DNA of 64,000 nucleotides from Haliotis rufescens (lineage: Eukaryota): positions 33,914,001 to 33,978,000 of the forward strand of contig NW_025963890.1 of assembly GCF_023055435.1 (NCBI RefSeq), in the 5' to 3' direction. The notes under the pieces were generated by a model, which did no database searches, was not told where the DNA came from, and saw only the letters and a list, made by a program, of their open reading frames with translations. This document shows positions 7,256-62,489 of the stretch, one piece after another. The position numbers were made by a program, and so were the translations under genes. Within the stretch, counting starts at the first letter, position 1, and each line of letters opens with the position of its first letter.

Positions 7256-8549
7256 ATCCTGACTTGAACTGTGAATGGATTAGCCTGGGTCTCGACGACT
7301 TATATGTATTTGGAATGGTAGGCATTAGCTGGCTACCAGCCATTGGAAGAAGAATATCACTTATGGATATGTGATGTTTTTGTCTCAGTGTCAATATAAC
7401 TATTTTTGAGTGAGATGTTGAGGTATCATAGGACACTTGGCAACATTTGTAGTGTACAGTACGAAATGGGGTTGAACATGGCCTGTTTTTATGTTCCTAT
7501 GATGTTTCTCACAAACCTCTATTAATTATTGGCAATAACTATCTACACTCGTGACCTACAGTGTCGCTTCGCGCAGTGAAGAGATTCATGACATAGGGCA
7601 GGCCATCACCGGGGGACAGACGGCTTATTTCCTTCAGCACATACTCCTCGTCCGAAAGTATACCCCTGTATATTAGATGTGACTGTGTGGTGCCATCATT
7701 GATCTAAATGTGATGTTAGGACATGGTATAGTTGTACACATTCTACATGTACGTGTACGGACATACACTTTTTTTTTGTAAAAGCCACGAAGCCCTGCAG
7801 CTCGCCTTCACTGGTAAGTATTTGTAGGTGGTAAACATTTAGGTTAGCTGGTTAAAATCTAGATTTAAACATTCAACGTCTATCATTTATACAACACCAG
7901 TCACGTGATATTAAATACCCAAAGGATCTCAAAAATGTATTTGGGACTGGGGAAAAGGTTCTGGCACACTTCGGCCAGCTTAAATGTATGGGCGTGGAAT
8001 TTTCTTTTTCGTTAACTCTTTTATACCTTCAGAAGAAAACTAAATGCAGTTTAGTGAGTTGATCATTTTATTGCCAAATGACACATGATATAAATTATAC
8101 AAATCGCAATACATAACAAAGGTAATTTGTAATAAACAACAGTGACACAACTGGTCCCAAAAAGTGCACCGGAGTTGAATCACTCCACACGAGACATCTG
8201 CCCGACTGAATCACCCCTCTGTGCGTCTCTACCTGTCCGGCCCCACAGACAACATGACTGGGTTCTGTCTGGGATACTTGTGACGAAACGACTCATGTAT
8301 CTACCACGTAACTCTGTATACTTCACCAACGGGAAAATGAAATGGCATATTTACAATAATGAAGAAAACATATCCCGTCAATGTTGCAGTTTGATCTCAA
8401 ATGGTCGTACGTGAAGAAACAGACGTTATTGGGCTCTGTGTTTATTTCAAGTTCTGAATAAAATTAATTATCTGATTAGCATAATCCCCTTTTTATGAAA
8501 TATGCAATATGTGAAAATATTATATTATACCAAGACAGTGTAATGTTGA

Positions 8550-8792
8550 CCGCTCTGAGTGGTTAGCGATAGTAGACAGATGTCGGACCATACGAGAGAC
8601 TGCTTGCACGGAGTATTTCCGAATTGTTGACATGCGTACATGGGAATTTACTTTGTCGCGTATCATGTTGCCCACAGAGTGATACTTCAGTAGAAATAAT
8701 CAAGTAGGCAGGCAGCCGCGACCAGTTGGATGTCTACAATGTCGTCAAACCCTGACGGGATGTTAACACTCACTCACTCACTCACTCACTCA
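8550..8792 (+). mobile_element. Degenerate SINE-like element ending in (ACTC)n tail
   Basis: A-box-like gagtggttagc at the 5' end and gttaac(actc)n at the 3' end, the same tail type as other SINEs in the window. Confidence 0.4.
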
Positions 8793-9526
8793 GTCCACAT
8801 ATGATCAAAGTGTTCCGAGTGCAAATATGTTCCGAATAGAAAAGGTGATATATCTGTGAAAAAAGGCGCTGATATATACTCTACGATTACATCGTTCACG
8901 AAGCAAAGCACCATTTGGGTTGTTTTTGACCATAGTTTTAAAGATTTTAAGCTCCGATTCACATATCTTTATGCTGCGGTTAACAATTAGTTACTATAAT
9001 CTACATATGTTAAGTAACACGACTGCAGATACAACACAGACAAATTCACCTAGTTCACCTAGTACCAGAGTGTTCTTGGAATATTGATATAACAGCAGCA
9101 CACCGTCCTTGCAATGGCAAACATACTGTGTATCCCTCTGCTTATGTTTGAACCAGACATTATGTCAAAGTAAGATATCAACGTGCACATAGGCGACAGA
9201 TGCGACTAGACGGTAAATGACGAAATGGTCTTTGAGGCTCGAGCCGGGCACATCTGCCGCCACAAATGTCCTGTCCGTATCACTGGCATGCGAGGGTATC
9301 GTTGATGGTGATGTTCAAGATTTTTCCAGCGCTCACGGTGGAGCCGACTTCGCACTTGGAGCAACAATGAAGGTCCGTCTTGTATATCTATTTCTGCCAC
9401 GTTTCACCTAATGTTCTAAACTGGTAATAGTAGGTGCGACATATTATTTGCATGTGTTACATGAGTCCCTGAATCTTGCATAGCGTTTTCGGAAGAAGGT
9501 GGTAAACATGGAGACGCTGTTTGTTT

Positions 9527-9603
9527 CTACCGTTGGAAGAAGACAGCGAGCAAGGCAAGGCAGATGCAGCCAAGGAAAGAACAGTTCACAAATGATGCCG
9601 AGT
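9527..9603 (-). CDS. Exon 4 (last) of GPI-anchored RGM-N/neuritin-like protein: (D)SASFVNCSFLGCICLALLAVFFQR*
   Basis: Strong acceptor ttggttctttttcag|. Phase 1 matches exon 3. Small residues followed by a hydrophobic tail and stop fit a GPI signal. Confidence 0.75.
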
Positions 9604-10083
9604 CTGAAAAAGAACCAAATACAAGATTGATACTGTATTTCTATTCAACAATACAACAAGAACGTACACCAATTGTTGAAAAAGTCACGGCGCAATAAGT
9701 GACGAGTTGTAAAACACTACAGCATGTAATCAGTACGGAAGATTCAAGTATGTTTACAATTTGTGAAGCTTGTCAGCACCTGGACATGGAATGTGGTAGT
9801 CATCATCGACATCGTACTTGCAATGGTTTAACCTATAGGGACAGGTCCGCCCTGACTATTATCCTTGGTTTACCAGCACCATATATTGTCCTTCGGGCTT
9901 TTCTCAAATATTATATATGATAGGTTTCTATTTCTCACCCCCGAAGGACCATAGAGGTTCTTTTACCATACTTCGCATACTACAATGATAGTTGTTTTCA
10001 ATTCCGATTTTTCAAGCCAGAACAAGCTGCGAGGCTTTGGAGTCTTTATGGACGTGGTTGGTATAGATATAGTATCTACTTAC

Positions 10084-10199
10084 CGCACTGGGGGTATTTA
10101 TCCTTGGCAGTGTCGATGTCATTCTGCACCCACTCGTTCTGCTTTGGGGTACATGCTCCCTTGACGTTCTCCAGGCAGTCTATCTTTTGTCGTATGTAC
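10084..10199 (-). CDS. Exon 3 of the same gene: (W)YIRQKIDCLENVKGACTPKQNEWVQNDIDTAKDKYPQC
   Basis: Acceptor cctctctatcgctgcag| and donor |gtaagt. 116 bp, phase 2 to 1, open frame. Confidence 0.8.
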
Positions 10200-13100
10200 C
10201 TGCAGCGATAGAGAGGATTCTGTAACACCACAACACAAGCAGTTAATCTTCTCTCATGTGTACCTACACAGGGAGACTCATTTAACACCACAACACAAGC
10301 AGTCAACCTCCCCATGTGTACCTACACAGGGAGACTCATTTAACACCACTACACAAGCCGTCAACCTCCCCATCTGTACATACACAGGGAGACTCATTTA
10401 ACACCACAACACAAGCAGTCAACCTCCCCATATGTACCTACACAGGGAGACTCATTTAACACCACAACACAAGCAGTCAACCTCCCTTATGTGTACCTAC
10501 ACAGGGAGACTCATTTAACACCACAACACAAGCAGTCAACCTCCCCATGATTACCTACACAGGAAGACTCATTTAACACCACAACACAAGCAGTCAACCT
10601 CCCCCATGATTACCTACACAGGAAGACTCATTTAACACCACAACACAAGCAGTCAACCTCCCTTATGTGTACCTACACAGGGAGACTCATTTAACACCAC
10701 AACACAAGCAGTCAACCTCCACCATGTGTACCTACACAGGAAGACTCATTTAACACCACAACACAAGCAGTCAACCTCCCTTATGTGTACCTACACAGGG
10801 AGACTCATTTAACACCACAACACAAGCAGTCAACCTCCACCATGTGTACCTACACAGGAAGACTCATTTAACACCACAACACAAGCAGTCAACCTCCCCC
10901 ATGATTACCTACACAGGAAGACTCATTTAACACCACAACACAAGCAGTCAACCTCCCCATGGTTACCTACACAGGGAGACTCATTTAACACCCCAACACA
11001 AGCAGGCAACCTCCCCCATGTGAACCTATACAGGGAGACTCATTTAACACCACAACACAAGCAGTCAACCTCCCCATGTGTACCTACACAGGGAGACTCA
11101 TTTAACACCACAACACAAGCAGTCAACCTCCCCATATGTACCTACACAGGGAGACTCATTTAACACCACAACACAAGCAGTCAACCTCCCCATGTGAACC
11201 TATACAGGGAGACTCATTTAACACCACAAAACAAGCAGTCAACCTCCCCCATGTGTACCTACACAGGGGGACTTATTTAACACCACAACACAAGCAGTCA
11301 ACCTCCCCATATGTACCTACACAGGGAGACTCATTTAACACCACAACACAAGCAGTCAACCTCCCCCATGATTACCTACACAGGAAGACTCATTTAACAC
11401 CACAACACAAGCAGTCAACCTCCCTTATGTGTACCTACACAGGGAGACTCATTTAACACCACAACACAAGCAGTCAACCTCCCCCATGATTACCTACACA
11501 GGAAGACTCATTAACACCACAACACAAGCAGTCAACCTCCACCATGTGTACCTACACAGGGAGACTCATTTAACACCACAACACAAGCAGTCAACCTCCA
11601 CCATGTGTACCTACACAGGGAGACTCATTTAACACCACAACACAAGCAGTCAACCTCCCTTATGTGTACCTACACAGGGAGACTCATTTAACACCACAAC
11701 ACAAGCAGTCAACCTCCCCCATGATTACCTACACAGGAAGACTCATTTAACACCACAACACAAGCAGTCAACCTCCCTTATGTGTACCTACACAGGGAGA
11801 CTCATTTAACACCACAACACAAGCAGTCAACCTCCCCCATGATTACCTACACAGGAAGACTCATTAACACCACAACACAAGCAGTCAACCTCCACCATGT
11901 GTACCTACACAGGGAGACTCATTTAACACCACAACACAAGCAGTCTACCTCCACCATGTGTACCTACACAGGGAGACTCATTTAACACCACAACACAAGC
12001 AGTCAACCTCCCCCATGTGAACCTATACAGGAAGACTCATTTAACACCACAACACAAGCAGTCAACCTCCCTTATGTGTACCTACACAGGGAGACTCATT
12101 TAACACCACAACACAAGCAGTCAACCTCCCCATATGTACCTACACAGGGAGACTCATTTAACACCACAACACAAGCAGTCAACCTCCCTTATGTGTACCT
12201 ACACAGGGAGACTCATTTAACACCACAACACAAGCAGTCAACCTCCCCCATGATTACCTACACAGGAAGACTCATTTAACACCACAACACAAGCAGTCAA
12301 CCTCCTTTATGTGTACCTACACAGGGAGACTCATTTAACACCACAACACAAGCAGTCAACCTCCACCATGTGTACCTACACAGGAAGACTCATTTAACAC
12401 CACAACACAAGCAGTCAACCTCCACCATGTGTACCTACACAGGAAGACTCATTTAACACCAACAACACAAGCAGTCAACCTCCCTTATGTGTACCTACAC
12501 GGGGAGACTCATTTAACACCACAACACAAGCAGTCAACCTCCCCATATGTACCTACACAGGGAGACTCATTTAACACCACAACACAAGCAGTCAACCTCC
12601 CCCATGATTACCTACACAGGAAGACTCATTTAACACCACAACACAAGCAGTCAACCTCCCCATGGTTACCTACACAGGGAGACTCATTTAACACCCCAAC
12701 ACAAGCAGGCAACCTCCCCCATGTGAACCTATACAGGGAGACTCATTTAACACCACAACACAAGCAGTCCACCTCCCCATGTGTACCTACACAGGGAGAC
12801 TCATTTAACACCACAACACAAGCAGTCAACCTCCCCATATGTACCTACACAGGGAGACTCATTTAACACCACAACACAAGCAGTCAACCTCCCCATGTGA
12901 ACCTATACAGGGAGACTCATTTAACACCACAAAACAAGCAGTCAACCTCCCCCATGTGTACCTACACAGGGGGACTTATTTAACACCACAACACAAGCAG
13001 TCAACCTCCCCATATGTACCTACACAGGGAGACTCATTTAACACCACAACACAAGCAGTCAACCTCCCCCATGATTACCTACACAGGAAGACTCATTTAA

Positions 13101-16100
13101 CACCACAACACAAGCAGTCAACCTCCCTTATGTGTACCTACACAGGGAGACTCATTTAACACCACAACACAAGCAGTCAACCTCCCCCATGATTACCTAC
13201 ACAGGAAGACTCATTAACACCACAACACAAGCAGTCAACCTCCACCATGTGTACCTACACAGGGAGACTCATTTAACACCACAACACAAGCAGTCAACCT
13301 CCACCATGTGTACCTACACAGGGAGACTCATTTAACACCACAACACAAGCAGTCAACCTCCACCATGTGTACCTACACAGGGAGACTCATTTAACACCAC
13401 AACACAAGCAGTCAACCTCCCCCATGATTACCTACACAGGAAGACTCATTTAACACCACAACACAAGCAGTCAACCTCCCTTATGTGTACCTACACAGGG
13501 AGACTCATTTAACACCACAACACAAGCAGTCAACCTCCCCCATGATTACCTACACAGGAAGACTCATTAACACCACAACACAAGCAGTCAACCTCCACCA
13601 TGTGTACCTACACAGGGAGACTCATTTAACACCACAACACAAGCAGTCTACCTCCACCATGTGTACCTACACAGGGAGACTCATTTAACACCACAACACA
13701 AGCAGTCAACCTCCCCCATGTGAACCTATACAGGAAGACTCATTTAACACCACAACACAAGCAGTCAACCTCCCTTATGTGTACCTACACAGGGAGACTC
13801 ATTTAACACCACAACACAAGCAGTCAACCTCCCCATATGTACCTACACAGGGAGACTCATTTAACACCACAACACAAGCAGTCAACCTCCCTTATGTGTA
13901 CCTACACAGGGAGACTCATTTAACACCACAACACAAGCAGTCAACCTCCCCCATGATTACCTACACAGGAAGACTCATTTAACACCACAACACAAGCAGT
14001 CAACCTCCTTTATGTGTACCTACACAGGGAGACTCATTTAACACCACAACACAAGCAGTCAACCTCCACCATGTGTACCTACACAGGAAGACTCATTTAA
14101 CACCACAACACAAGCAGTCAACCTCCACCATGTGTACCTACACAGGAAGACTCATTTAACACCAACAACACAAGCAGTCAACCTCCCTTATGTGTACCTA
14201 CACGGGGAGACTCATTTAACACCACAACACAAGCAGTCAACCTCCCCATATGTACCTACACAGGGAGACTCATTTAACACCACAACACAAGCAGTCAACC
14301 TCCACCATGTGTACCTACACAGGGAGACTCATTTAACACCACAACACAAGCAGTCAACCTCCCCCATGATTACCTACACAGGAAGACTCATTAACACCAC
14401 AACACAAGCAGTCAACCTCCACCATGTGTACCTACACAGGGAGACTCATTTAACACCACAACACAAGCAGTCAACCTCCCCCATGATTACCTACACAGGA
14501 AGACTCATTTAACACCACAACACAAGCAGTCAACCTCCCTTATGTGTACCTACACAGGGAGACTCATTTAACACCACAACACAAGCAGTCAACCTCCCCC
14601 ATGATTACCTACACAGGAAGACTCATTAACACCACAACACAAGCAGTCAACCTCCACCATGTGTACCTACACAGGGAGACTCATTTAACACCACAACACA
14701 AGCAGTCTACCTCCACCATGTGTACCTACACAGGGAGACTCATTTAACACCACAACACAAGCAGTCAACCTCCCCCATGTGAACCTATACAGGAAGACTC
14801 ATTTAACACCACAACACAAGCAGTCAACCTCCCTTATGTGTACCTACACAGGGAGACTCATTTAACACCACAACACAAGCAGTCAACCTCCCCATATGTA
14901 CCTACACAGGGAGACTCATTTAACACCACAACACAAGCAGTCAACCTCCCTTATGTGTACCTACACAGGGAGACTCATTTAACACCACAACACAAGCAGT
15001 CAACCTCCCCCATGATTACCTACACAGGAAGACTCATTTAACACCACAACACAAGCAGTCAACCTCCTTTATGTGTACCTACACAGGGAGACTCATTTAA
15101 CACCACAACACAAGCAGTCAACCTCCCCCATGATTACCTACACAGGAAGACTCATTTAACACCACAACACAAGCAGTCAACCTCCCTTATGTGTACCTAC
15201 ACAGGGAGACTCATTTAACACCACAACACAAGCAGTCAACCTCCCCCATGTGAACCTACACAGGGAGACTCATTTAACACCACAACACAAGCAGTCAACC
15301 TCCACCATGTGTACCTACACAGGAAGACTCATTTAACACCACAACACAAGCAGTCAACCTCCACCATGTGTACCTACACAGGAAGACTCATTTAACACCA
15401 ACAACACAAGCAGTCAACCTCCCTTATGTGTACCTACACGGGGAGACTCATTTAACACCACAACACAAGCAGTCAACCTCCCCATATGTACCTACACAGG
15501 GAGACTCATTTAACACCACAACACAAGCAGTCAACCTCCACCATGTGTACCTACACAGGGAGACTCATTTAACACCACAACACAAGCAGTCAACCTCCCT
15601 TATGTGTACCTACACAGGGAGACTCATTTAACACCACAACACAAGCAGTCAACCTCCCCCATGATTACCTACACAGGAAGACTCATTTAACACCACAACA
15701 CAAGCAGTCAACCTCCACCATGTGTACCTACACAGGGAGACTCATTTAACACCACAACACAAGCAGTCAACCTCCACCATGTGTACCTACACAGGGAGAC
15801 TCATTTAACACCACAACACAAGCAGTCAACCTCCCCCATGTGAACCTATACAGGAAGACTCATTTAACACCACAACACAAGCAGTCAACCTCCCTTATGT
15901 GTACCTACACAGGGAGACTCATTTAACACCACAACACAAGCAGTCAACCTCCCCATATGTACCTACACAGGGAGACTCATTTAACACCACAACACAAGCA
16001 GTCAACCTCCCTTATGTGTACCTACACAGGGAGACTCATTTAACACCACAACACAAGCAGTCAACCTCCCCCATGATTACCTACACAGGAAGACTCATTT

Positions 16101-18485
16101 AACACCACAACACAAGCAGTCAACCTCCCTTATGTGTACCTACACAGGGAGACTCATTTAACACCACAACACAAGCAGTCAACCTCCCCCATGATTACCT
16201 ACACAGGAAGACTCATTTAACACCACAACACAAGCAGTCAACCTCCCTTATGTGTACCTACACAGGGAGACTCATTTAACACCACAACACAAGCAGTCAA
16301 CCTCCCCATATGTACCTACACAGGGAGACTCATTTAACACCACAACACAAGCAGTCAACCTCCCCATGGTTACCTACACAGGGAGACTCATTTAACACCC
16401 CAACACAAGCAGGCAACCTCCCCCATGTGAACCTATACAGGGAGACTCATTTAACACCACAACACAAGCAGTCAACCTCCCCATGTGTACCTACACAGGG
16501 AGACTCATTTAACACCACAACACAAGCAGTCAACCTCCCCATATGTACCTACACAGGGAGACTCATTTAACACCACAACACAAGCAGTCAACCTCCCCAT
16601 GTGAACCTATACAGGGAGACTCATTTAACACCACAAAACAAGCAGTCAACCTCCCCCATGTGTACCTACACAGGGGGACTTATTTAACACCACAACACAA
16701 GCACTCAACCTCCCCCATATTTACCTACCCAGGGAGACTCATTTAACACTACAACACAAGCAGTCTACCTCCACCATGTGTACCTAACAGGGAGACTCAT
16801 TTAACACCACAACACAAGCAGTCAACCTCCCCCATGTGAACCTACACAGGGAGACTCATTTAACACCACAACACAAGCAGTCAACCTCCACCATGTGTAC
16901 CTACACAGGGAGACTCATTTAACACCACAACACAAGCAGTCAACCTCCCTTATGTGTACCTACACAGGGAGACTCATTTAACACCACAACACAAGCAGTC
17001 AACCTCCACCATGTATACCTACACAGGGAGACTCATTTAACACCACAACACAAGCAGTCTACCTCCACCATGTGTACCTACACAGGGAGACTCATTTAAC
17101 ACCACAACACAAGCAGTCTACCTCCACCATGTGTACCTACACAGGGAGACTCATTTAACACCACAACACAAGCAGTCAACCTCCACCATGTGTACCTACA
17201 CAGGAAGACTCATTAACACCACAACACAAGCAGTCAACCTCCCTTATGTGTACCTACACAGGGAGACTCATTTAACACCACAACACAAGCAGTCAACCTC
17301 CCCATATGTACCTACACAGGGAGACTCATTTAACACCACAACACAAGCAGTCTACCTCCACCATGTGTACCTACACAGGGAGACTCATTTAACACCACAA
17401 CACAAGCAGTCAACCTCCACCATGTGTACCTACACAGGAAGACTCATTAACACCACAACACAAGCAGTCAACCTCCCTTATGTGTACCTACACAGGGAGA
17501 CTCATTTAACACCACAACACAAGCAGTCAACCTCCACCATGTGTACCTACACAGGGAGACTCATTTAACACCACAACACAAGCAGTCTACCTCCACCATG
17601 TGTACCTACACAGGGAGACTCATTTAACACCACAACACAAGCAGTCAACCTCCCCATATGTACCTACACAGGGAGACTCATTTAACACCACAACACAAGC
17701 AGTCAACCCCCCCCCCCATGGTTACCTACACAGGGAGACTCATTTAACACCACAACACAAGCAGTCTAGCTCCACCATGTGTACCTACACAGGGAGACTC
17801 ATTTAACACCACAACACAAGCAGTCAACCTCCCTTATGTGTACCTACACAGGGAGACTCATTTAACACCACAACACAAGCAGTCTACCTCCACCATGTGT
17901 ACCTACACAGGGAGACTCATTTAACACCACAACACAAGCAGTCTACCTCCCCATGGTTACCTACACAGGGAGACTCATTTAACACCACAACACAAGCAGT
18001 CAACCTCCCCATGATTACCTACACAGGGAGACTCATTTAACACCGCAACACAAGCAGTCAACCTCCCCCATGTGAACCTATACAGGGAGACTCATTTAAC
18101 ACCACAACACAAGCAGTCAACCTCCCCCATGTGAACCTATACAGGGAGACTCATTTAACACCACAACACAAGCAGTCAACCTCCCTTATGTACCTACACA
18201 GGGAGACTCATTTAACACCCCAACACAAGCAGTCAACCTCCCCATATGTACCTACACAGGGAGACTCATTTAACACCCCAACACAAGCAGGCAACCTCCC
18301 CCAAATGTGTACCTACACAGGGAGACTCATTTAACACCCCAACACAAGCAGGCAACCTCCCCCAAATGTGTACCTACACAGGGAGACTCATTTAACACCC
18401 CAACACAAGCAGGCAACCTCCCCCAAATGTGTACCTACACAGAGAGACTCATTTAACACCCCAACACAAGCAGGCAACCTCCCTC
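10200..18485. repeat. ~58-59-bp satellite, ~140 copies, with 1703-bp (29-mer) higher-order duplication; fills intron 2
   Basis: Monomer tgtgtacctacacagggagactcatttaacaccacaacacaagcagtcaacctccccca. Variant landmarks and repeat ORFs recur at exactly +1703 (11136/12839, 11429/13132, 11782/13485, 12076/13779). Confidence 0.97.
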
Positions 18486-18494
18486 CATTATACC

Positions 18495-18628
18495 CTCTCT
18501 CACACACACACACATATACACTCACTCTGTCACACACACACATACACACTCACTCCCTGTCAAACACATACACACACTCACTCACTTACTCTCTGTCACA
18601 CACACACACACACACTCACTGTCACACA
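18495..18628. repeat. Imperfect (CA)n/(CACT)n microsatellite abutting an assembly gap
   Basis: Direct reading. Confidence 0.9.
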
Positions 18629-18796
18629 NNNNNNNNNNNNNNNNNNNNNNNNNNNNNNNNNNNNNNNNNNNNNNNNNNNNNNNNNNNNNNNNNNNNNNNN
18701 NNNNNNNNNNNNNNNNNNNNNNNNNNNNNNNNNNNNNNNNNNNNNNNNNNNNNNNNNNNNNNNNNNNNNNNNNNNNNNNNNNNNNNNNNNNNNNNN
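18629..18796. other. Assembly gap (N-run)
   Basis: Run of n. Confidence 1.
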
Positions 18797-18843
18797 GACA
18801 TCCGCCCCCTCTCATGACGTATGATCCCAAACAGCAGTCCTAC

Positions 18844-18958
18844 CAGCAGAAGGTTCCCTCATCAATGCCTGTACGTGATGCTTGTCTGGAGAACACTTGG
18901 TTACATTCAGTCGCCTTGATACACTGCGATACACCGCGGACGGTGCTCATGAGGTGGA
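18844..18958 (-). CDS. Exon 2 of the GPI-anchored protein gene: (V)HLMSTVRGVSQCIKATECNQVFSRQASRTGIDEGTFC(W)
   Basis: Acceptor gtttatgtttcag| and donor |gtagga. 115 bp, phase 1 to 2. The terminal TG joins the first G of exon 3 to give Trp. Confidence 0.78.
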
Positions 18959-19602
18959 CTGAAACATAAACGTGACATGCACATGACTGTGTAGGAAGCA
19001 TGCCAGGCTTTTAAGATACACACAAGGAAATAACTAAGCACCCTGTGTTTGCGACAATCTATGTGCACCAACGTGGTATCACAACATGGGCACGTCGTGG
19101 TTACACTCGCAACTGATTCGAAGGATTTGTGAGTTGTCTTCATGAGATTACAATGAACGTTCTGGGGCTTAGTAATTGTTGTTCCCATTTTGACTCATTA
19201 CAGTACTGATGAAATACTGTGTTATTCACGTACTTATTGACCACTGCCATCTTTATCTGTGCTTTCTTTCGTCAAGAGCCTCATCTTCCGCGAGTACTGC
19301 CATGTTGTTAGACATACATGGTCGAAGAAACGGGGACTGCTTCATTTCCAGGTGTATAGAATAATAACGATCGGTTTTTGTAAAATCAGTAAACCTGAGG
19401 TTTGTACACGACGTCAAGCTAAATGTTTATTCCTAAGTGTGAGAGAGTGAGTAGAGTGTTTCAATTATGTCGCGACGGGTCAGATTAATGTGCGGGGAAC
19501 TAATGGAGTGGACGTTGACATCTTCAGTGAAACACAAGAGTGCCTATATGGTATTTGTGAGGTGAAAAGGGGTTTAACGTCGCGTTCAAGAATATTGCAC
19601 TT

Positions 19603-19766
19603 NNNNNNNNNNNNNNNNNNNNNNNNNNNNNNNNNNNNNNNNNNNNNNNNNNNNNNNNNNNNNNNNNNNNNNNNNNNNNNNNNNNNNNNNNNNNNNNNNN
19701 NNNNNNNNNNNNNNNNNNNNNNNNNNNNNNNNNNNNNNNNNNNNNNNNNNNNNNNNNNNNNNNNNN
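19603..19766. other. Assembly gap (N-run)
   Basis: Run of n. Confidence 1.
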
Positions 19767-19960
19767 TGCCGATTTTATAGTGCTAGCCCATTGAGAAACC
19801 ATGCCGTAGTTTAACACGAATACCCAATTCAGACACAGTGTACTGACTCCGAGGAGTCAGTCCTTGTTTCAACCACTTATGCCGAGCGCCAGGCAGGGTA
19901 ACAACAAGTACCATCTTTTAGCGTCTTTTGGTATGATGCGGCCGGACATCGAACCTCACG
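19767..19960 (-). mobile_element. tRNA-headed SINE fragment (Meta/V-SINE-like core); related fragment at ~24560-24640
   Basis: agcgccaggcagggtaacaacaagt...ttttggtatga is shared with ~24580. A reverse B-box (tcgaacc) lies at ~19950. Confidence 0.5.
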
Positions 19961-20494
19961 AGTCGGTCCGGTATGGAACTGACATGTATCAGTAGATCCT
20001 GGCTCGAATGGGCACAACGATTCGGTTTGTAGAGACGCAGTTCAAGTTTGTTATGCATCCTATCTCACGATATGAAATTACGTTTCAACCAGGCCCCGTA
20101 AGGATTCCGGGCCAGAATAGGTACCCAGTCTCTCCATGCTGTAAGAGCCCACTAATGATCACTGGCTAGTTACACCGTGTCACCGCTGCTGATCATGTAT
20201 GTGATATCGTACTCAGACGACGTGGATCGTTGCTGATGTTGTTGACCCTACCCCTTATATACATGCCGTCTTGGAATATCACTGCGGCGCACCACAACAT
20301 GCATATACTACAACCGCTGGTTCTTCACAGGAACTTCAACTATCAGTTCTCCACATTTCGCTACTACGGGAATCGAACCAAGTTGATATTGTGATACGAG
20401 AGGTGGGGTCCAGGTTAACACGTGGTTCCTGCAACGAGGTATGGCACTATCTGTTGTCTGTTAGATGAGGGGCGGCGCCTAGAGATCTCCCATC

Positions 20495-20702
20495 CAACCA
20501 TCAATATTCCAGCTTTATGACGGCGGTTCATAAATAGTCGAGTCTGGACCAGACAATCCAGTGACTGACATCATGAGCATCGATTCAGGCAATTTGGATA
20601 TGACATGCAATCAAGCCTTCCCACTCAATCCACTTACTCGCCTCTTATGACAAGCATCGGCTGCTGTGGACCGGCATCCTTACCCGGGATCCCTACGGGT
20701 CT
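20495..20702 (-). mobile_element. SINE-like repeat family A; an oppositely oriented degenerate copy lies at ~20095-20300
   Basis: aatattccagct...cgagtctggaccagacaatccagtga...catgagcatcgat...cgcctcttatgacaagcat is shared with 30935 and 32675. Confidence 0.75.
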
Positions 20703-20742
20703 TATCCTGAGAGTTTGATGGCAAACCACAAGAGAGATTTAT

Positions 20743-22337
20743 GGCCAGGTTCACTACAGTGCCGATTATGGCTCCCGTTTGAGATCAGACAGCGCTACGA
20801 CCCGAAAAGTGAAAAAGTCGGATTACTATCCTCAATGACCGATATGGAATGTCCTATCATTGTCTGAACGCAGTCGTATACGTGCTACCCCCATCACAAC
20901 AAACTAGTTCTCAATACTTTCGTGAAAATGTTGTCGAACGGGCTCCAACTGTGTATGAACGTAGTGGACGTAGTAACAACTATCGACAGTCTTTTTACGA
21001 ACTTCATGGACGGGCTCGGACGGGGAGGGTGCTCTAGAACTTTGAGTCTGCTAAAAATTGTATCCCGTCCATCCCGTTCTGCAATTAGTCGGACTGACAA
21101 CGTACTTAAAACGAGAAAGACGTATTACGAACAGAATTGCCGTACTTCGAACGGAATTGCCGCACTTCGAACCTACTAGGGACGTGTTACGACGAGGTGC
21201 AGTCGGACATAAATTTCAGTACGTGTGCACACCGACAGGGTCGACTTCTCTTTGGAGGCATGATGTGTACAGCTCGGGGCCCTGAACTTGAATGAAGACT
21301 GGCTACAACGCGCTCGGTACCCATAGGAGTCGAGCCAGGACGGGCCAGGACGCGAATACACACGCACTTGGGACGAGATGAGGACGTATTGCGAACGAGT
21401 TGGTCGGGTTAAGAATTAGTTAGAACTGGCTTGGACGTATTGTGGACGAGATAGAGCGAGGTTGAGCTGGTTAAGAACGGGTTCAGAACGGCTACGGACG
21501 TGCTCGAACTGCTTCGAAACGTTGTCGGGATGAGGTGAAAGGGCACTTTTACACATCTGAACTGGATATATACAAGGACTGCAGACTGGCTAAGAACGAG
21601 ATAAGAACGAGATAGACGTATTGAGGACTGCTTATGAACGAACTAGCATCGTATTTTACGCCAAACTACGCGTTCTACCGTGATCACAGCCCGTTCTAGT
21701 ATTTTGTTTAGAACGGGGTAGAACGGGATAGAACTACTTTAGTGTGATGGTAGCATTCGTAACAGTCCTACGGATCGAGAAAGGTCCAGAGAGGTCGCGG
21801 CCAAGCACTCCCGTAACATTCGGGAAACTCAGCCGATTATGTCTAGTCGGACTACAATCGTGACTATGCCGTGACAGATTCTGCTGTATCGGATCAAAAT
21901 CGTAACAATGTCCTGTGTTGTCTGGACGGTGTCTTGTGGATCGGAACGCTGGCGTGATGAACGGGCATGAATTGTTCATTGCCGTTTCTTGTTGCTTGAG
22001 TCCAGATTGCGTCCAGATCTTGCCGAATGCGAACCGTCTTTGTCGGTTCACTGTCCGATCACTGTCGGATCTATGTCGGATCGCATTCGGGAGAATAGGG
22101 ACACCGTCGGGACAGATTCGGTTGTTATTTACCATGCGGAAGAAACAAATCAGATCAGATTCGGATTGAAAACGGGAGAATCGGGCCGAATTCGGCTGGG
22201 ACGCTTTCTGAACAATATATCTGATTGTGAATTTCCCGCCACAAATCACAGGATCTTGATCAGACTTTTGACAAATTTTTATGGGGAATGCTCCTATCAT
22301 GGACGGCAGTAAAAATCCTGAATGCGTGACTGAGCCC
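20743..22337. mobile_element. Non-autonomous TIR element (MITE, PIF/Harbinger-like ends) containing a nested second MITE at ~20882-21757
   Basis: Outer imperfect TIRs are ggccaggttcac...aaaaagtcggattactatcct versus the reverse complement gggctcagtcac...caaaagtctgatcaagatcct. Inner TIRs are tgctacccccatcacaacaaactagttct versus the reverse complement tgctaccatcacactaaagtagttct. CpG-rich; no transposase. Confidence 0.55.
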
Positions 22338-24056
22338 ATATTTGTCACACAAATATTTCACCATACTGATAAAATTGTCACGTGTGTAAATAGTGAATTG
22401 TACAGGCTTTTTCGAGCTGACAGTTCGTGTACAATAAGTGTATTTGTTTGCAAGCCCATTCAGCTTTAAATCCCACACACGCCGCTGTGGACACACAATT
22501 AATACTTTTACAACACCTTGCTCATCAGTTCATCACACAAACATCCTACACCTCCACACTAATCGTTATCATGCTTATGACTGCTTACACAAGTAAAGTT
22601 ACGATTGTATAAACTTTAAGTGATATTTTCAGCATGTAGATAGACATTAGTATTGAAGTTCGAGGATGTATCCACTTGGTCCTAAATAAAGGTGTTCATA
22701 TCAATCCCGTCATTATTTATCAGCGCTACACTCTGACGCAGACATTTTTATCTAAACGTGGGTGGTAACAGGCTTTTCAAACCCCGACTTCTACAACGCC
22801 AACTGCACTGGCCTACTAGCTCCATGATTAGTAGCACAGCCTGCAGATTTAGCAATAGGCTAATCAGAGCCCTTCACCTACACGACAGTGAACACTTACA
22901 AGCTGACCTAGCTAGTGCTATAGGTGTGGCCAACATTCATCGATTTTATGGTGAGGCTTTTCACCCTTTAGTCGTGTTATATCGAGGGTTTATATTGTGT
23001 CCGAGGTTGCCAGGAGATAGACTTAAGACGTAAAAAATTACATTTTCGATTACGTCCACAGCATCTAAACCTAATGCATTTTATCTGGATTAAAAGTTTT
23101 ATCCCGAATTTTAATAGTTTGCGGAAATATTAGGACAACCTTATAAATCATCGATCGGAACATATTTGATTTCGTTGATAAATATTCAATAATTCATCTA
23201 TATTTCACGTCCGTCGTGAAGTCGCCTTGACTTGCAGCTGAAAAGTACAGACAATATTACCATAGACGCGATACTTGTGGTTAATATTTGGATGTTTCAG
23301 AAATAAGGCGGATATATCTGTAGTGTGCTGCATTGTAGGATACGGTGACTTGAAGTGCGTCGCTGATAGTACCTGGTTGACCGCATGGCGCTCATATTTC
23401 AAAACAGTAATGTGAAAGGGTGGATTTATGTTGGTATATTCAACTCTTCAGCATACCGAGGACATTTTACAGTGTAGACTCACAACTGTACAGTACATGA
23501 CGTATCACGTGATCAAGAAATGTACATACGCTGACAGGTGATACGCCCATTAGTGACGAATGGTTATGGCTAAAAATAACTTGAGCAAAATTCCGCCTAA
23601 ACGAGCACAAGCGAGCACGATTAATCATAATAGTGACAGAACATGCAGTTTTTAGGAAATGCAAGGAGAGAGAAACATTCTCTTGGCTCCTAATGTAGCG
23701 ACAATGCAACCCATCACCACCGCCTACAATTACTTGTCTGTTACGACAGGTATTTCTGACTTTTTAAACGTGTCATCCCGTAAATATGAATAACGACTTT
23801 CAGATCAACCACAAGTCACGAGACACACTGTTACTCCGTGCCAAGCTGGTCAGGGCCCGTGTTTTAGTGGAAGTATAGCGACAATGTTCCCACAGCTAAA
23901 ACGCTAAACAGAAACATCACCTGCCGTTACACTTGGCTACACTTCTCAAGTACGGGCAGGACAACAACGACTAGACTGGGTCAGGACGTTTATAGTAATA
24001 TATACACAATGAAGAAATGTCGTGATCATCGTCAGACACAATACAAGATGGCTTAC

Positions 24057-24087
24057 CTGAACACAGTATTGCCAAAACGTATTTCAT
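24057..24087 (-). CDS. Exon 1 (coding) of the GPI-anchored protein gene: MKYVLAILCS(V), signal peptide N-part
   Basis: aaaATGaaatacgttttggcaatactgtgttcag|gtaagc. Phase 1 matches exon 2, giving the signal-peptide-like MKYVLAILCSVHLMSTVRG. Confidence 0.7.
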
Positions 24088-27000
24088 TTTCAGGTATGAA
24101 GACTAGGAATCCCCCAAGTCCGCGACTGTTGCACGACCTCCTGGTCTGAGCTGTATCTGTCGTCTGCGCCAGGTACGAAGCGTGTCCTACTTACTCGTTG
24201 CCGTATATACTCTGCAGAATTACCCGCGAACAGGTAGACGGTGCAGGTTACATGAACTGTGGAGTCATTAGGGGCTTTTCGATAAGGATCAATATTAGAA
24301 CCCTCAGACGCTGTTCCAACACATTTCGACACATAGCCTGAGGCTTCAGTTGGACAGTTTTACAACACTATCCGTATGGATTTGCTGCAGATTCGATCGC
24401 GAGTATTGACTGTACATGGGTCAGTAGACCCGTAATTTATAATGTAGGCTGTATTTTTATCAGATCCGTACTGATAATGGACAGCAATAACCTACGCGAT
24501 ACCCTCGATGCTGCTGACGCCTGGGTCCACTCGCACAAATTCATCAACCTGAGACTCCATAACATAACCTTTAAGGTTAAGCGCCAGGCAGGGTAACAAC
24601 AAGTGCCGTCTACACACACATTTTGGTATGACATTGGCGAACAACTGACCTTCAGGGACCCGGCATGCAGTCTCCAACCGATGCCTTAGTCGGTTGTAAG
24701 ATATTAACGACGTTGTAAAGGGCGCACAGCACAATACACACGAAGTGATAAACTGGAGAAGATATTGTATTGTGCCCAAAATGTTATTAATATAAAACGA
24801 ATTGACTCAGGGCCGCGTTCAAGACCTTTACAAATTGTCCAAAGTAAAAAAATCTAGCTGGCTTAATTGGGAAACGAGAAAAGTGTCTTCCGCTTGTGTA
24901 TGCCATGAGTAAGTATTTCGTTAAAGTAGTGAGTTTCAGCGCCATCACCTCCCTGTGACACCCATTTTGTACAAAACACTGTATACATGTACATCATACA
25001 TGTATTACTGAATCACTGCGGTAACTTCTAATTAACCTTGTGTGAGTGCGCGTCCAACCGTGCATTTAGGGTTGTAATCCGTTTGCACTTTAAGATGCAG
25101 TTGAGGCAAAATGGAGTTTATTATTTGTTCAACCGTAAGTGTTGTGGAACAATGAATACTTATGCCCCGAGTAAGTATTCAGTTAAAGAAGTTTAACGCA
25201 ACCTGTGTCTATGTTATAAGCCATTTGTACTTCAAGACTCAGTTGAGGCTAAGTAGAGTTATGCCCCTTAGTTAACCATTCATCGGCTATTTCACAACAC
25301 ACTGATGTATTCTGAAATGCCAGAACTGCAGTGTTGATGATAAGATTGTGAGATGGGAAATCCAAGGGAAGTAAACATGCTGACCTTGTCAACTATTCCA
25401 TGTATGCAAATTATTTGTACTTACGCCCTGTGTTTTATTTATCACCCTGATATATAAGGCAGGAGTTGATATTTCCAAAAGAGGTCCGGAGGGGTCTGGG
25501 TTATCATGAATTCTCGAATTTACATCCCCCCAACTCCAACAATAGACCTTTTTGTCGGCAGCTTCAATTTAGAACCAAAATGGTAGATATGGTGTTTGGC
25601 TGATCGGGTACACTTGCCCAGACAATGGCTCTAGATACCAGTAAGTGGTATACTTATTGAGTCATTTGAACAGACATTATAAATTAGTTGATGCTTATTC
25701 ATATCGAGTAATGGCGAAGTCTCCCATTCAAATCTCTCATTTTACTACACACACATAGACATGGCGAACATCGTCAACACTTAATATTCTTGTCAAAAGT
25801 CAACATGGAAATTTGAAATTGCTTGCTCCCATGTCAAGAAAAACGGTCAGATATCAATCTTTAACTTGTGTCTATTTAAACGTTAATCGAAACCTACGTT
25901 GTTTGACTGCATGACACATGTCATGATGTATATCATTTTTGTGGTTAATTGTTTATAACTAAATTACAAATGATTACTTGACATTTGACTGGCTAACCAA
26001 GCAATGGTGTTTGGGTTTATGTTTCAACAAAACAAAAAGAAACATTCCACGCTATTTCCTGATTGGCTGATTGGGTGGGGCTAGTATTTGATTATTGCGC
26101 TGAACAATGTCATTGATTTCGTGTTGTTGTCACAAGATTTGTTGGAGTTAATGATTAAATATGCAGCCTGTGAAGGTTTTTTTTTGTTAACGTATATATT
26201 TATAAAAAAAATGATTTAAATATGTTTGTGCGTTTATGAAGTGAAAACTTAAAACCCGGTGTGCACACATTGATGTACCTCAACAAACGCAAAAAATATA
26301 TTAAACTCAATTTTTAACACACAAGCCATCTACTACAAGATGCACGTACATATGTAGGCGGGAATATTCACTAAACTCAGAGCCAAGCATCCATTGAACC
26401 AGATTCATAGCATTTATTGTGAAATCCTCTTTTCTGTTGTATGTTCGAATTATTGTGATCAGATATACGTTTGTAGCAGAATACTATCTGTCAAGTTAAC
26501 GTGTATCATTTTAGCTCTCTTCAAACGATGCTCGTATTAGAACTAGCGTTTTATGTCGAACAAGGTATTCCTTTTAGAAACGAAATTTTTGAAATAAAGA
26601 TTTATACGAATATGTAACACTCTGTACTGATAGGTAAATCCTGTGTGTAGGGGGTGTGGGGTGTGGGGGTGTGGGGGACTTTAAATGCTGAAAATATATT
26701 TGGCTTCGAACATTTTCACAAATATATAACAACAATAATGAGCTATTTTATGTCATATAGATGGAATATTGCTGAGTGCGAAGTTAAACAATCAAACAAA
26801 CGAACAAACAAAAATGATACAGATAACATAGGCGATGTAACATGCATCTGAATAACCCATCAAATTATTCCCCTTTAATTGAACTTTTATTACCTTAATC
26901 AGAACTTTAGATTTCTGTGCTGTGAATATATAGGATATTCATTGCTAGGTTACCATGCGTATTATACTTGTCGGTAGCGTCTCTACCGCTGAACTGTCAA

Positions 27001-28102: not shown

Positions 28103-29141
28103 GTGAGTCACCACGGATACGCAACAGCCGGCGGATACCAGTTTACAGCTGATGAATGTCGTAAAATATATTCAATAATAATCTCTAAGATTTAGAGTTG
28201 TGTACGATATATTCAATTGTATAATATGTGAAAGCTATGATATAAGGATTCATTTTGTAAACATTCCGCGAATGTCGTAAAGGTAAACACACGCCATTCG
28301 AAGACAGTAAGGTCAGAATTAAGATTCGTTGTACCCAGAGACCATATAATCTATTATATGGTCTCTGGTTGTACAATACGTCTTTGGTTGTACTGAAATG
28401 TAACAGTAACTGTACTGAAATGTAATAGCTTATGTACTGAAATGTAAAAACATTATCTGCGTAGCATGAAAGTGTGAAAACATTCTGTTGACTGACAACT
28501 GCGTGGCAAGTGCTTGCATGGGCCTGATGTTACGCTGTTCCACGAGAACATTGCCTAACGTACACTCAATTTGTTAATGACCACTGATACTTACTTACTT
28601 ACTTACTTACTTTGGAGATTTAACGTGCGCTTTCCGACTGATGCGTATTTCGCACACGGTACACACACTGATACTGACGAACTCGAATATTTATAGAATA
28701 CGTCTTCTAACCAGCTTTGCGGCTTTTTGACTTAATTGAGCCAGTGATCTATTATATGGTCTATGATTGAGCCGAATTACAAAATTTGACATGTTCATAC
28801 AGAAGTTATAATACTGTATCATACTGTTCCTGACATCTAGTACAGTGGTGCACTGTCACTGTGTAATCAGAATGGATGCTTGAATATGCATAGACTCACG
28901 TGTACTGCTTTTATACAGCCAGTGTTGGAAGCACTCGTAGGTTGCATGGTACAAAGACATCCGTTCTGACAGCACTGGTTAATTTCTACTATTTGTTCAC
29001 ACATTTTTGCATACTATGGTGCACATGCAGTTCTCCAAAAACATCTGCATATCTACAATAAAACGTCTACTTTCCACTATTTTTCATATCCATAGCCTCA
29101 GAATTTTAAGTCTGAATAATGTGTTTTTTCACAAAATTCAG

Positions 29142-30771
29142 TTTGTTTACTGCTGCGACAGGCTTTGGTTTTCATGTTTGATGGTCATGTCTAAACGGAA
29201 ACTGCAGCCAGAGATATATTATATCCAAAAGACAAGAGTTGTGGAAACAGTGGCTCTTGGCAGAAGTACTGTCAAATCTGGGAGCATGTTAGGCAGGTGC
29301 ATCTCTTCACAGATTGAGAATGTACAAGATAATTGTGCTTGTTTGGATCAGGCCTCACCGCAGCCAGCAGGGGACAGATGGAAGTTGTCACGACCTGACC
29401 TGGTATGTCCTGAACCAGTGATCGCGAGGGGTGTCTCACACAAGCCTCAATACAACATGAGTAAAGGGCAAGATATTAAAACTGAAGGGAAGCTAATCAC
29501 ATGTGTTCAAGAGGACACTGTCTCTCAGAATCATTTTGAAAGTTGTCAGGATGGTCGTATTGGAAGTGCAGAGGATGTAAATATTATTGCTGAAAATAAT
29601 GAAAATGCTGCACTGTGTGCAGAAAATGAGGAGATCCTGTATTGCCAGCCTGGTGAAGTTCAACCACTTGACTCTCAGCCTCAGCAGTCTGACCAGTCAG
29701 ACATGTTACCTCCTGACTCTCAGCCTCGGCACTCTGACCGGTCAGACATGACACCTCCTGACTCTCAGCCTCGGCAGTCTGACCGGTCAGACATGACACC
29801 TCCTGACTCTCAGCCTCGGCACTCTGACCGGTCAGACATGACACCTCCTGACTCTCAGCCTCGGCAGTCTGACCGGTCAGACATGACACCTCCTGACTCT
29901 CAGCCTCGGCACTCTGACTGGTCAGACATGACACCTCCTGACTCTCAGCCTCGGCACTCTGACCGGTCAGACATGACACCTCCTGACTCTCAGCCTCGGC
30001 AGTCTGACCGGTCAGACATGACACCTCCTGACTCTCAGCCTCAGCACTCTGACCAGTCAGACATGACACCTCCTGACTCTCAGCCTCGGCAGTCTGACTG
30101 GTCAGACATGACACCTCCTGACTCTCAGCCTCGGCACTCTGACTGGTCAGACATGACACCTCCTGACTCTCAGCCTCGGCAGTCTGACCAGTCAGACATG
30201 ACACCTCCTGACTCTCAGCCTCGGCACTCTGACTGGTCAGACATGACACCTCCTGACTCTCAGCCTCGGCAGTCTGACCGGTCAGACATGACACCTCCTG
30301 ACTCTCAGCCTCGGCACTCTGACTGGTCAGACATGACACCTCCTGACTCTCAGCCTCGGCAACCCAACCGATCGGACATGACACCACCTGACTCCCAGCC
30401 TCGGCAACCCAACAGGTTAGAAACAACACCACCTGACTCTCAGTGGCGACAATCTGCCCGGCAAGACACGACACCTCCCGACTTTCCGTCTCTGCAACCC
30501 GACTGGCCAGACACAACTGCAACACAGACAGAGCCTGACACAGTTACTCACAAGAAGACAAAACCAACAGTTTTACCAAAACATGTCCTTGAAAAGGTTG
30601 AGCATTTAGTGTCCAAGAAATGTGAAAGTGACATTTCCTGGATACAGGATGTTGCGATGCATCCTTCTAACCCAACACTCTCCGATGCAGAGGAGGAATG
30701 TTTGTTTGGAAATTTATTTTCTGATCAACAGGAAAATTTCAAGAAGAGAAATCAAGCCAGCCATGAGAAAA
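29142..30771 (+). CDS. AKAP7: AKAP7-like exon 2: long low-complexity N-terminal region with 15-aa repeats
   Basis: Acceptor ttttttcacaaaattcag|, within the 590-aa ORF 29007-30779. Donor a|gtaagt, phase 1, fits exon 3. Confidence 0.72.
29670..30500 (+). repeat. Coding 45-bp minisatellite, ~18 copies (DSQPR[H/Q]SD[R/W/Q]SDMTPP)
   Basis: Unit gactctcagcctcggcagtctgaccggtcagacatgacacctcct, frame-preserving. Confidence 0.95.
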
Positions 30772-30934
30772 GTAAGTGAAGATGCACTTCATGACATACC
30801 TACATTAGGCCCCTTATTATTTTGTTACTGTTAGTTTTACAGTTGGCAAACTAAATACTGGTTAACATACCGATAGATGGTCTTCTCAACTTTTGCAACG
30901 AATATTTGTGGGTGTATGTTAATGATGGTAGATC

Positions 30935-44214: not shown

Positions 44215-44254
44215 GAATCAATAGGAAGAAAACTGTTCTTGCATAGTTGGCAAT

Positions 44255-62130: not shown

Positions 62131-62489
62131 GACAACATCCACGCGTGCAGATTGAACTGCCCTGCGTTTGGATGAAGTTGACGGGTGTGAGGGTGGATCA
62201 GGAGATCCGGTCTCACAGGCAGTGGAAGTGGCATCTGTGTGGCCTGGGCCAGCAAGTCGGGGTACCACGATCTGTTCGGCCACATGGGCGTGATCAGCAC
62301 CATTCGACAGCGCACTCCTCGGAGCCGGCTTAGAATGAGTGGTATTAACGCCGTCGGCGGGTAAGCATAAGCGTCCATGCCCGTCCAGTCTAACACGAGA
62401 GCATCGTGATCGATGGCCCTCGTGTCCGGGACTGGTGATACAAACAACGGGAGTTGATTGTTGAACCTGGTTGCGAACAGGTCGACCAT
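62118..62489 (-). pseudogene. DNA adenine methyltransferase-like domain of DIRS1 pol
   Basis: VDLFATRFN (motif I-like), DAL..DW, YAYPP (motif IV-like), P.WP...WYP. Confidence 0.8.

What the first reader, a model, noticed from the sequence alone, without database searches (positions are those of the whole stretch)
9527..24087. Hidden 4-exon gene for a stand-alone, GPI-anchored RGM-N/neuritin-like protein
Seen in sequence: four minus-strand exons (24087-24057, 18958-18844, 10199-10084, 9603-9527) with GT-AG sites and matching phases (1, 2, 1) splice into MKYVLAILCSVHLMSTVRGVSQCIKATECNQVFSRQASRTGIDEGTFCWYIRQKIDCLENVKGACTPKQNEWVQNDIDTAKDKYPQCDSASFVNCSFLGCICLALLAVFFQR (112 aa). It has a signal peptide, C-x5-C-x18-C-x8-C-x7-C-x21-C, and a small-residue site followed by a hydrophobic tail. 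Established (from recall): the BMP-binding N-terminal three-helix domain of repulsive guidance molecules has FC-x8-C-x7-C-x21-C spacing, and neuritin/CPG15 is a small GPI-anchored protein with C-x8-C-x7-C. Inference: a minimal RGM-N/neuritin-fold surface protein lacking the vWD domain. It could be an invertebrate BMP co-receptor/decoy or a neural surface factor. Only one exon appears in the ORF track.
Basis: partly seen in the sequence, partly recalled or inferred. Interest (0 to 1): 0.8.

Follow-up and report, generated by a model that had tools for sequence, protein, structure and literature searches.

The report
Small RGM-N-like abalone surface protein
A real, expressed four-exon abalone gene encodes a tiny secreted, probably lipid-anchored protein whose predicted three-helix, three-disulfide fold best matches the BMP-binding head of repulsive guidance molecules; the gene is already annotated as 'uncharacterized' and its function is untested.

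Summary
All four minus-strand exons, their GT-AG sites and phases 1/2/1 are in the sequence. Both assembly gaps lie in introns. Spliced transcript contigs from four runs (four studies, two species) carry the exon 3-4 joint and run from exon 3 straight into exon 2.

The gene is not hidden. RefSeq protein XP_046327711.1 (Haliotis rufescens, 'uncharacterized protein LOC124111881', 112 aa) matches every exon letter for letter.

It belongs to a small gastropod family (Haliotis, Patella, Pomacea). All members have a signal peptide, C-x5-C-x18-C-x8-C-x7-C-x21/22-C, and a 24-26-residue GPI-type tail.

RGM_N is the best match by every method, but never significantly by sequence:
- Pfam: top hit, 15.8 bits against a cut-off of 24.2.
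- PDB profile search: only hit, E 0.58.

Neuritin appears only as a weak embedding lead. The RGM residues that grip BMP/GDF (loop Gly, Leu knob) are absent, so a BMP co-receptor role is unsupported.

The genome also holds a canonical RGM gene and one distant paralog of this gene. The paralog is possibly what this scan noted on another piece of the genome (s1-811150).

Exons were never joined; full-length work used the public protein.

The parts
24057..24087 (-). Exon 1 coding part (MKYVLAILCS plus 1 nt). The 5'UTR reaches at least about 24125.
   Evidence: In-frame TAG 18 nt upstream. Contig tail lengths. Identical start in P0001.
18959..24056 (-). Intron 1 (GT..AG, phase 1). Contains assembly gap 19603-19766.
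18844..18958 (-). Exon 2: end of the signal peptide, helix 1, Cys1-Cys3.
   Evidence: Its 3' end is found as the loose end joined to exon 3 in four runs.
10200..18843 (-). Intron 2 (GT..AG, phase 2, in the codon after Cys3). Contains gap 18629-18796 and the 59-bp satellite at 10223-18488.
10084..10199 (-). Exon 3: helices 2 and 3, Cys4-Cys6.
   Evidence: Identical in the related species (X13).
9604..10083 (-). Intron 3 (480 nt, GT..AG, phase 1).
   Evidence: Joint 9603|10084 in one contig of each of four runs.
9527..9603 (-). Exon 4 coding part: putative omega site (D88/S89) and hydrophobic GPI-signal tail. Stop codon at 9529-9527.
8096..9526 (-). 3'UTR (at least 1.4 kb), broken in contigs at a (GAGT)n microsatellite at 8761-8801. 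AATAAA at 8072-8067 lies just beyond the last contig end.
   Evidence: (tables 2 and 8).

Best explanation
This is a genuine, transcribed gene of an abalone (identical to Haliotis rufescens LOC124111881).

It makes a 112-aa precursor with three parts:
- a signal peptide (about residues 1-19, cut after VRG);
- a mature domain of about 69 residues and 8 kDa, with three helices (24-39, 44-64, 67-83) locked by three disulfides from six invariant Cys;
- a C-terminal GPI-attachment signal: small residues D88-S-A straight after the last Cys, a short spacer, then a terminal hydrophobic run.

The mature domain would sit on the outer face of the cell, held by a lipid anchor and releasable by phospholipase. 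Its fold is that of the N-terminal, ligand-binding head of repulsive guidance molecules, standing alone without the vWD/GDPH part that binds neogenin.

It most likely acts as a tethered binding module for a secreted or surface partner. The strictly conserved helix 3 face (WVQNDIDTA in Haliotis) is the likeliest contact surface. That partner is probably not bound in the RGM-BMP manner.

Shown: the gene, two of its three splice joints, expression, family and Cys framework. Predicted: the fold. Inferred: the GPI anchor, homology to RGM_N and any binding function.
For: - Exons and splice sites. Spliced contigs in four runs, four studies and two species.
- Identical RefSeq protein and Haliotis orthologues.
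- Family members in Patella, Pomacea and two unnamed samples at E 1.6e-6 to 4e-5, with identical Cys spacing and the same termini.
- Exon 3 is identical and exon 4 differs once (1 change in 193 coding nt) between the two species, against 22 changes in the 725 nt of 3'UTR covered by the same contig.
- AlphaFold model with core pLDDT 79-90 and three helices.
- RGM_N is the top Pfam hit (E 0.017; best member 0.0067) and the only PDB sequence hit, with four Cys in register.
- RGM_ND is described as a bundle of three helices with three disulfides: PMC7354924.
Against: - No sequence test reaches significance: 15.8 bits against the 24.2 cut-off; E 0.58; hhalign against the abalone's own RGM_N gives P 0.057 and probability under 1%; BLASTP finds nothing.
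- The model comes from only 10 sequences. AlphaFold was trained on RGM structures and may be cued by the Cys spacing, so fold and spacing are not fully independent evidence.
- The GPI anchor and the signal cleavage site rest on sequence features only.
- The domain is split by an intron here, but lies in one exon in the canonical RGM gene.
Confidence: 0.6

Rival explanations
1. It is a lineage-restricted gastropod Cys-stabilised helical surface protein with no evolutionary tie to RGM or neuritin. On this view the likeness is a common three-helix arrangement plus a coincidental Cys spacing.
Against: Four different methods independently put RGM_N first. The last four Cys match RGM exactly (x8, x7, x21), there are six Cys in total, and the F/Y before Cys3 is shared. 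Identity in the structural alignment is about twice that of other bundles.
Confidence: 0.25
2. It is the gastropod counterpart of vertebrate neuritin (NRN1/CPG15): a small GPI-anchored neurotrophic factor that acts membrane-bound or after release.
For: Neuritin clusters are the best named hits in the ESM Atlas (0.85 for the whole protein, 0.75 for residues 20-90). Neuritin has the same overall design: a small protein with an N-terminal signal and a C-terminal GPI signal (PMC12877949). The abalone genome has no canonical NRN1 gene that would fill this role. From recall only: neuritin also has six Cys with C-x8-C-x7-C.
Against: Embedding scores under 0.9 are leads only by the tool's own calibration. 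No family member hits Pfam NRN1 even at E 10, whereas two hit RGM_N. The x21 spacing before the last Cys matches RGM, not what I recall for neuritin. No neuritin sequence or structure could be obtained for a direct test.
Confidence: 0.15
3. It is a BMP/GDF co-receptor or decoy that binds the ligand's type-I-receptor site as the RGM heads do.
For: The best fold match is the BMP2/GDF5-binding RGM head. A GPI tether like that of RGMs is likely. An aromatic residue stands where RGMB His106 stacks on GDF5 (W72 here; Y or F in three of the four distant relatives, N in Patella), and an acidic residue often stands at the RGD 'D' position.
Against: In RGMB, Gly101, Leu103 and His106 are essential: G101R, L103E and H106R impair or abolish binding (PMC7354924). 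Here the matching residues after Cys5 are T-P-K-Q. No family member has the Gly, and all have polar Q or T in place of the Leu knob. The abalone's true RGM keeps G-D-I.
Confidence: 0.15
4. The C-terminal hydrophobic run is a transmembrane anchor, or the protein is simply secreted, rather than GPI-anchored.
For: No GPI predictor or experiment was available. The hydrophobic tail could in principle span a membrane.
Against: In all ten family members the tail is 24-26 residues, starts with two or three small residues right after the last Cys, and ends in a 12-17-residue hydrophobic run with zero to five residues after it. That is too short for a helix plus cytoplasmic stop-transfer and is typical of a GPI signal.
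Confidence: 0.15

Closest known systems
RGM N-terminal domain (Pfam PF06535; RGMA/B/C heads in PDB 4UHY, 4UHZ, 4UI0, 4UI1, 4UI2, 6Z3J, 6Z3M)
   Different: It stands alone, with no vWD-like C-terminal domain, no GDPH autocleavage site and hence no neogenin-binding part. The Cys1-Cys2 and Cys2-Cys3 gaps are x5 and x18, against x4 and x20-22 in RGM. The RGD/RGN-loop Gly and the Leu knob needed for BMP2/GDF5 binding are absent. The domain is split by a phase-2 intron. Its score is below the Pfam gathering cut-off.
Neuritin / CPG15 (Pfam PF15056 NRN1)
   Same: A small precursor with a signal peptide, one Cys-rich domain and a C-terminal GPI signal. It is the best named cluster by protein-language-model features.
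   Different: No Pfam NRN1 match in any member. The embedding scores (0.85 and 0.75) are below the tool's level of trust. NRN1 clusters are chordate, whereas this family is gastropod.
MIT domains and other generic three-helix bundles
   Different: They are cytosolic, have no disulfides, show 3-13% identity and have no shared Cys framework. The resemblance is in fold geometry only.

Membership tests
RGM_N domain (PF06535) | Score at or above the Pfam gathering cut-off (24.2 bits) | tested here: not met
   P0001 scores 15.8 bits, E 0.017, and RGM_N is the top hit. 2 of 8 members hit, best E 0.0067. The exon pieces alone give no hit.
RGM_N domain (PF06535) | Bundle of three alpha-helices stabilised by three disulfides (PMC7354924) | tested here: met
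   Predicted only. The AF2 core has pLDDT 79-90, with helices 24-39, 44-64 and 67-83 and six invariant Cys. RGM heads rank first by Foldseek and VIA-align. Disulfide pairing could not be read because no coordinates were available.
RGM_N domain (PF06535) | Cys framework [F]C-x8-C-x7-C-x21-C | tested here: met
   Spacing is 8, 7, 21/22 in all ten members. The same spacing is seen in human RGMA and in the abalone RGM exon.
RGM_N domain (PF06535) | BMP/GDF contact residues: RGD/RGN-loop Gly, Leu knob, His on helix 3 | tested here: not met
   T66-P67-K68-Q69 stand in place of R-G-D/N-L. No member has the Gly or a hydrophobic knob. An aromatic residue stands at the His position in all Haliotis members and in three of the four distant relatives (N in Patella).
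RGM protein family (RGMA/B/C, DRAG-1) | C-terminal vWD-like domain with a GDPH autocleavage site (neogenin-binding part) | tested here: not met
   The protein ends 25 residues after the head domain. The abalone's true RGM exon carries GDPHLRTF.
RGM protein family (RGMA/B/C, DRAG-1) | GPI anchor | tested here: inconclusive
   The tail has the form of a GPI signal in all members. No predictor or experiment was available.
Neuritin (PF15056 NRN1) | Match to the Pfam NRN1 model | tested here: not met
   No NRN1 hit at E up to 10 in any of 8 members. There is also no NRN1 locus in the genome above the cut-off.
Neuritin (PF15056 NRN1) | Small precursor with an N-terminal signal and a C-terminal GPI signal (PMC12877949) | tested here: met
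   Sequence features only.
Neuritin (PF15056 NRN1) | Same fold or Cys framework as neuritin | not testable with these tools
   No neuritin sequence or structure could be fetched. The only evidence is embedding scores of 0.85 and 0.75.

The most novel reading that the evidence does not exclude
The gastropod family, vertebrate neuritin and the RGM head may be one ancient superfamily of GPI-tethered three-helix, three-disulfide modules. On this reading the abalone protein is the invertebrate counterpart of neuritin, a free-standing 'RGM head'. That would give neuritin, whose fold relationships and binding partners are still unsettled, a structural template and a candidate class of ligands.
Probability: 0.15. 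Interest if true: 0.75.

Novelty: new variant of a known kind. Interest (0 to 1): 0.5.

Why it matters
RGM heads are known only as the N-terminal part of large RGM co-receptors. A free-standing, lipid-anchored copy of that fold would be a new architecture for this module. It is conserved across three gastropod orders and sits alongside a canonical RGM gene in the same genome.

If the tie to neuritin also holds, it would link two families of neural surface proteins that are treated separately, and it would suggest where to look for neuritin's partners.

Practically, it gives a name and a testable hypothesis to a set of RefSeq 'uncharacterized proteins'.

Tried and rejected
- Exon-by-exon Pfam scans gave nothing; the pieces are too short.
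- Own-genome searches with the exon 2 and exon 3 peptides found only the gene itself.
- phmmer of P0001 against PDB gave only an RNF4 RING hit (E 0.03), whose two stretches each have E 12. I rejected it as chance between Cys-rich segments.
- The Pfam DSHCT hit (E 0.031) and the DSHCT structure rows in the Atlas were rejected as generic helical matches.
- hhalign and BLASTP against the abalone's own RGM_N exon were not significant.
- The weaker PF06535 and PF15056 hits in the genome that I looked at (L008, L011) are repeats, not genes.
- The paralog's two exon pieces have no Pfam hit and do not bridge to RGM_N.
- Literature searches for a neuritin-RGM structural link, or for stand-alone RGM_N proteins in molluscs, found nothing relevant.
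Full-length searches, the fold and the alignments used the public protein P0001 by its id. P0001 was returned by a search with the unjoined open frame around exon 3.
Full report
**1. What is in the sequence**

Each piece translates, in its own frame, to the stated peptide.

A script that looked at each exon and each split codon separately, with no joined sequence built, gave the following:
- GT..AG at all three introns, which are 5098, 8644 and 480 nt long.
- Split codons G+TC (V11), TG+G (W49) and G+AC (D88).
- An in-frame TAG 18 nt upstream of the ATG.

**2. The assembly gaps (asked to be tested first)**

The N runs at 18629-18796 and 19603-19766 lie in intron 2 and intron 1 respectively. 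No coding frame crosses them.

A hidden exon in the intron 2 gap is excluded for the main mRNA, because transcript contigs go from exon 2's last letters straight into exon 3. For intron 1 the evidence is indirect:
- Contig tails of 177-178 nt beyond exon 3 fit the remaining 109 nt of exon 2 plus 31 nt of coding exon 1 and about 38 nt of leader.
- The 112-aa proteins annotated on four separate Haliotis assemblies are colinear across that boundary.

I filled in no N.

**3. Expression**

The run search listed small contig sets that hold 69-88% of the stretch.

I laid four of them on 8000-10222 (three studies of organism A and one of a related organism B). Each has one contig that skips 9603|10084, which reads CT..AC on the plus strand and so GT..AG on the minus strand.

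Each such contig also has a loose end at exon 3's 5' edge. Its 30 printed letters are the reverse complement of exon 2's 3' end.

Exon depth is 48-580 against 3-5 in intron 3. The own genome holds only one copy of exon 2 and of exon 3, so a retrocopy does not explain the spliced form.

The 3'UTR runs to at least 8096. Contigs break at a (GAGT)n run at 8761-8801, and an AATAAA sits at 8072-8067.

In organism B, exon 3 is identical and exon 4 has one change (9550, Leu to Phe in the tail). That is 1 change in 193 coding nt, against 22 changes in the 725 nt of 3'UTR covered by the same contig. This is a modest sign of constraint.

**4. Already annotated, and a family**

I searched with the unjoined 81-aa open frame around exon 3. 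It returned P0001 = XP_046327711.1, 'uncharacterized protein LOC124111881 [Haliotis rufescens]', 112 aa. All four exon peptides sit in it at residues 1, 12, 50 and 89.

So the gene is not hidden, and the window is from H. rufescens or something nearly identical to it. From here on, full-length work used P0001 by id. I never joined exons myself.

Orthologues exist in H. cracherodii, H. rubra (two isoforms with different first exons) and H. asinina, at 63-96% identity.

A profile search of 1.84 billion representatives found only four more relatives, at E 1.6e-6 to 4.2e-5:
- Patella caerulea KAK6188431.
- Pomacea canaliculata XP_025111053.
- Two unnamed sequences.

The ESM Atlas shows two mollusc clusters of 66 and 51 members as nearest neighbours.

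**5. Architecture**

All ten sequences share the following:
- An N-terminal hydrophobic stretch.
- Cys spacing of 5, 18, 8, 7, 21/22.
- No other conserved Cys.
- A 24-26-residue tail that begins with small residues right after Cys6 and ends in a hydrophobic run at the very C-terminus.

That is the shape of a signal peptide plus a GPI-attachment signal. It leaves a mature domain of about 69 residues and 8 kDa, mostly acidic, with no N-glycosylation site in Haliotis.

No SignalP or NetGPI was available, so cleavage and anchoring are inferred.

**6. Is it RGM-N-like?**

*Sequence.*
- RGM_N (PF06535) is the top Pfam hit for P0001: E 0.017, 15.8 bits against a cut-off of 24.2, residues 25-65 on profile positions 2-46.
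- RGM_N is hit by 2 of 8 members, best E 0.0067.
- A family profile against all PDB sequences has a single hit at E up to 10: the RGMA head 4uhy_C, E 0.58, with four Cys in register.
- Against the abalone's own RGM_N exon, hhalign gives P 0.057 and BLASTP gives nothing.

None of this is significant on its own.

*Structure.* With ten sequences AlphaFold gives a core of pLDDT 79-90 and helices 24-39, 44-64 and 67-83.
- Foldseek against 350,542 PDB chains ranks an RGMB head first: probability 0.89, target TM 0.69-0.72, rmsd 2.6-2.8 Å, but E about 1.

Tool output confirms the recalled spacing. RGMA reads FC-x8-C-x7-C, and the abalone RGM reads C-x8-C-x7-C-x21-C.

*My reading.* The fold likeness is probable (about 0.75) and common descent is plausible (about 0.55). 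Two caveats apply. Three-helix bundles are common. Also, the model may have been cued by the same Cys pattern that prompted the hypothesis.

**7. Neuritin**

Neuritin clusters are the best named Atlas hits: 0.85 for the whole protein and 0.75 for residues 20-90. Both are below the tool's level of trust.

No family member hits Pfam NRN1, and the genome has no NRN1 locus above the cut-off.

Neuritin's overall design, a small protein with a signal peptide and a GPI signal, is the same (PMC12877949). I could bring no neuritin sequence or structure into the session, so its Cys spacing remains recall.

**8. BMP binding**

In RGMB the alpha2-alpha3 'RGD/RGN loop' Gly101, the Leu103 knob and His106 make the key contacts. 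G101R, L103E and H106R impair or abolish BMP2/GDF5 binding (PMC7354924).

After Cys5 the abalone's true RGM reads Q-G-D-I...Y.

This protein reads T-P-K-Q...W. Its relatives read P-S-D-T, Q-S-D-T, T-P-E-Q and P-V-D-T.

The Gly and the hydrophobic knob are missing throughout the family. Only an acidic residue and an aromatic residue recur. An RGM-style grip on BMP is therefore unlikely, though another mode or another ligand is not excluded.

**9. Genome context**

- The genome has one canonical RGM exon (C1:83852242-83852442, 64.5 bits), with GDPH in the same open frame.
- It also has one distant paralog of the window gene on contig C556.
- One paralog exon reads (C)RGLRDYLAC-x7-C-x22-C (hhalign against the family: P 4.5e-5, probability 69%).
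- About 1.5 kb upstream, a second paralog exon reads C-x5-C-x18-C and ends in a phase-2 donor in the codon after Cys3. That is exactly where intron 2 of the window gene sits.
- No further copies were found.
It may be this paralog.

**10. Verdict**

It is a new variant of a known kind rather than a member by Pfam's standard.

Noticed in passing
window 10223-18488 (intron 2): An 8.3-kb satellite of a 59-bp unit (about 140 copies, 92% alike) ends 24 nt from exon 3. On the transcribed strand it carries 97 copies of TGTGTAG|GTACA(C/T), look-alikes of exon 3's acceptor GCTGCAG|GTACATACG. Transcript contigs nevertheless use the true acceptor. The same stretch was noted earlier as s1-811133.
   Followed up: partly
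G000:C556:39831195-39831350 and about 39832817-39833005 (L015, L019), minus strand: A distant paralog of the window gene with the same Cys spacing and the same phase-2 intron after Cys3. Its first and last exons were not located, and neither exon piece has a Pfam hit.
   Followed up: partly
G000:C1:83852242-83852442 (L003), minus strand: The canonical RGM gene of this genome. The whole RGM_N domain (64.5 bits) and the GDPHLRTF autocleavage motif lie in one open frame.
   Followed up: partly
window about 24088-24900, upstream of exon 1: The contig of run X1 continues 907 nt beyond exon 3's 5' edge, about 730 nt more than in X3 and X12. This suggests a longer leader, an alternative upstream exon or retained intron. 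H. rubra has an annotated isoform with a different first exon.
   Followed up: no
window 8761-8801: A (GAGT)n microsatellite inside the 3'UTR, at which all transcript contigs break.
   Followed up: no
window 43669-47586, 49956-51014, 61122-63992: Transposon remains. There is a reverse transcriptase next to tyrosine-recombinase-like ORFs (DIRS/Ngaro-type) and a GDSL-lipase-like ORF, a Tc1/mariner-type DDE transposase with HTH domains, and a second recombinase/RT-like cluster at the window's end.
   Followed up: partly
window 29007-30779 (+): A 590-aa open frame with about 20 tandem copies of a 15-residue unit (PPDSQPRHSDRSDMT) and no Pfam match.
   Followed up: no
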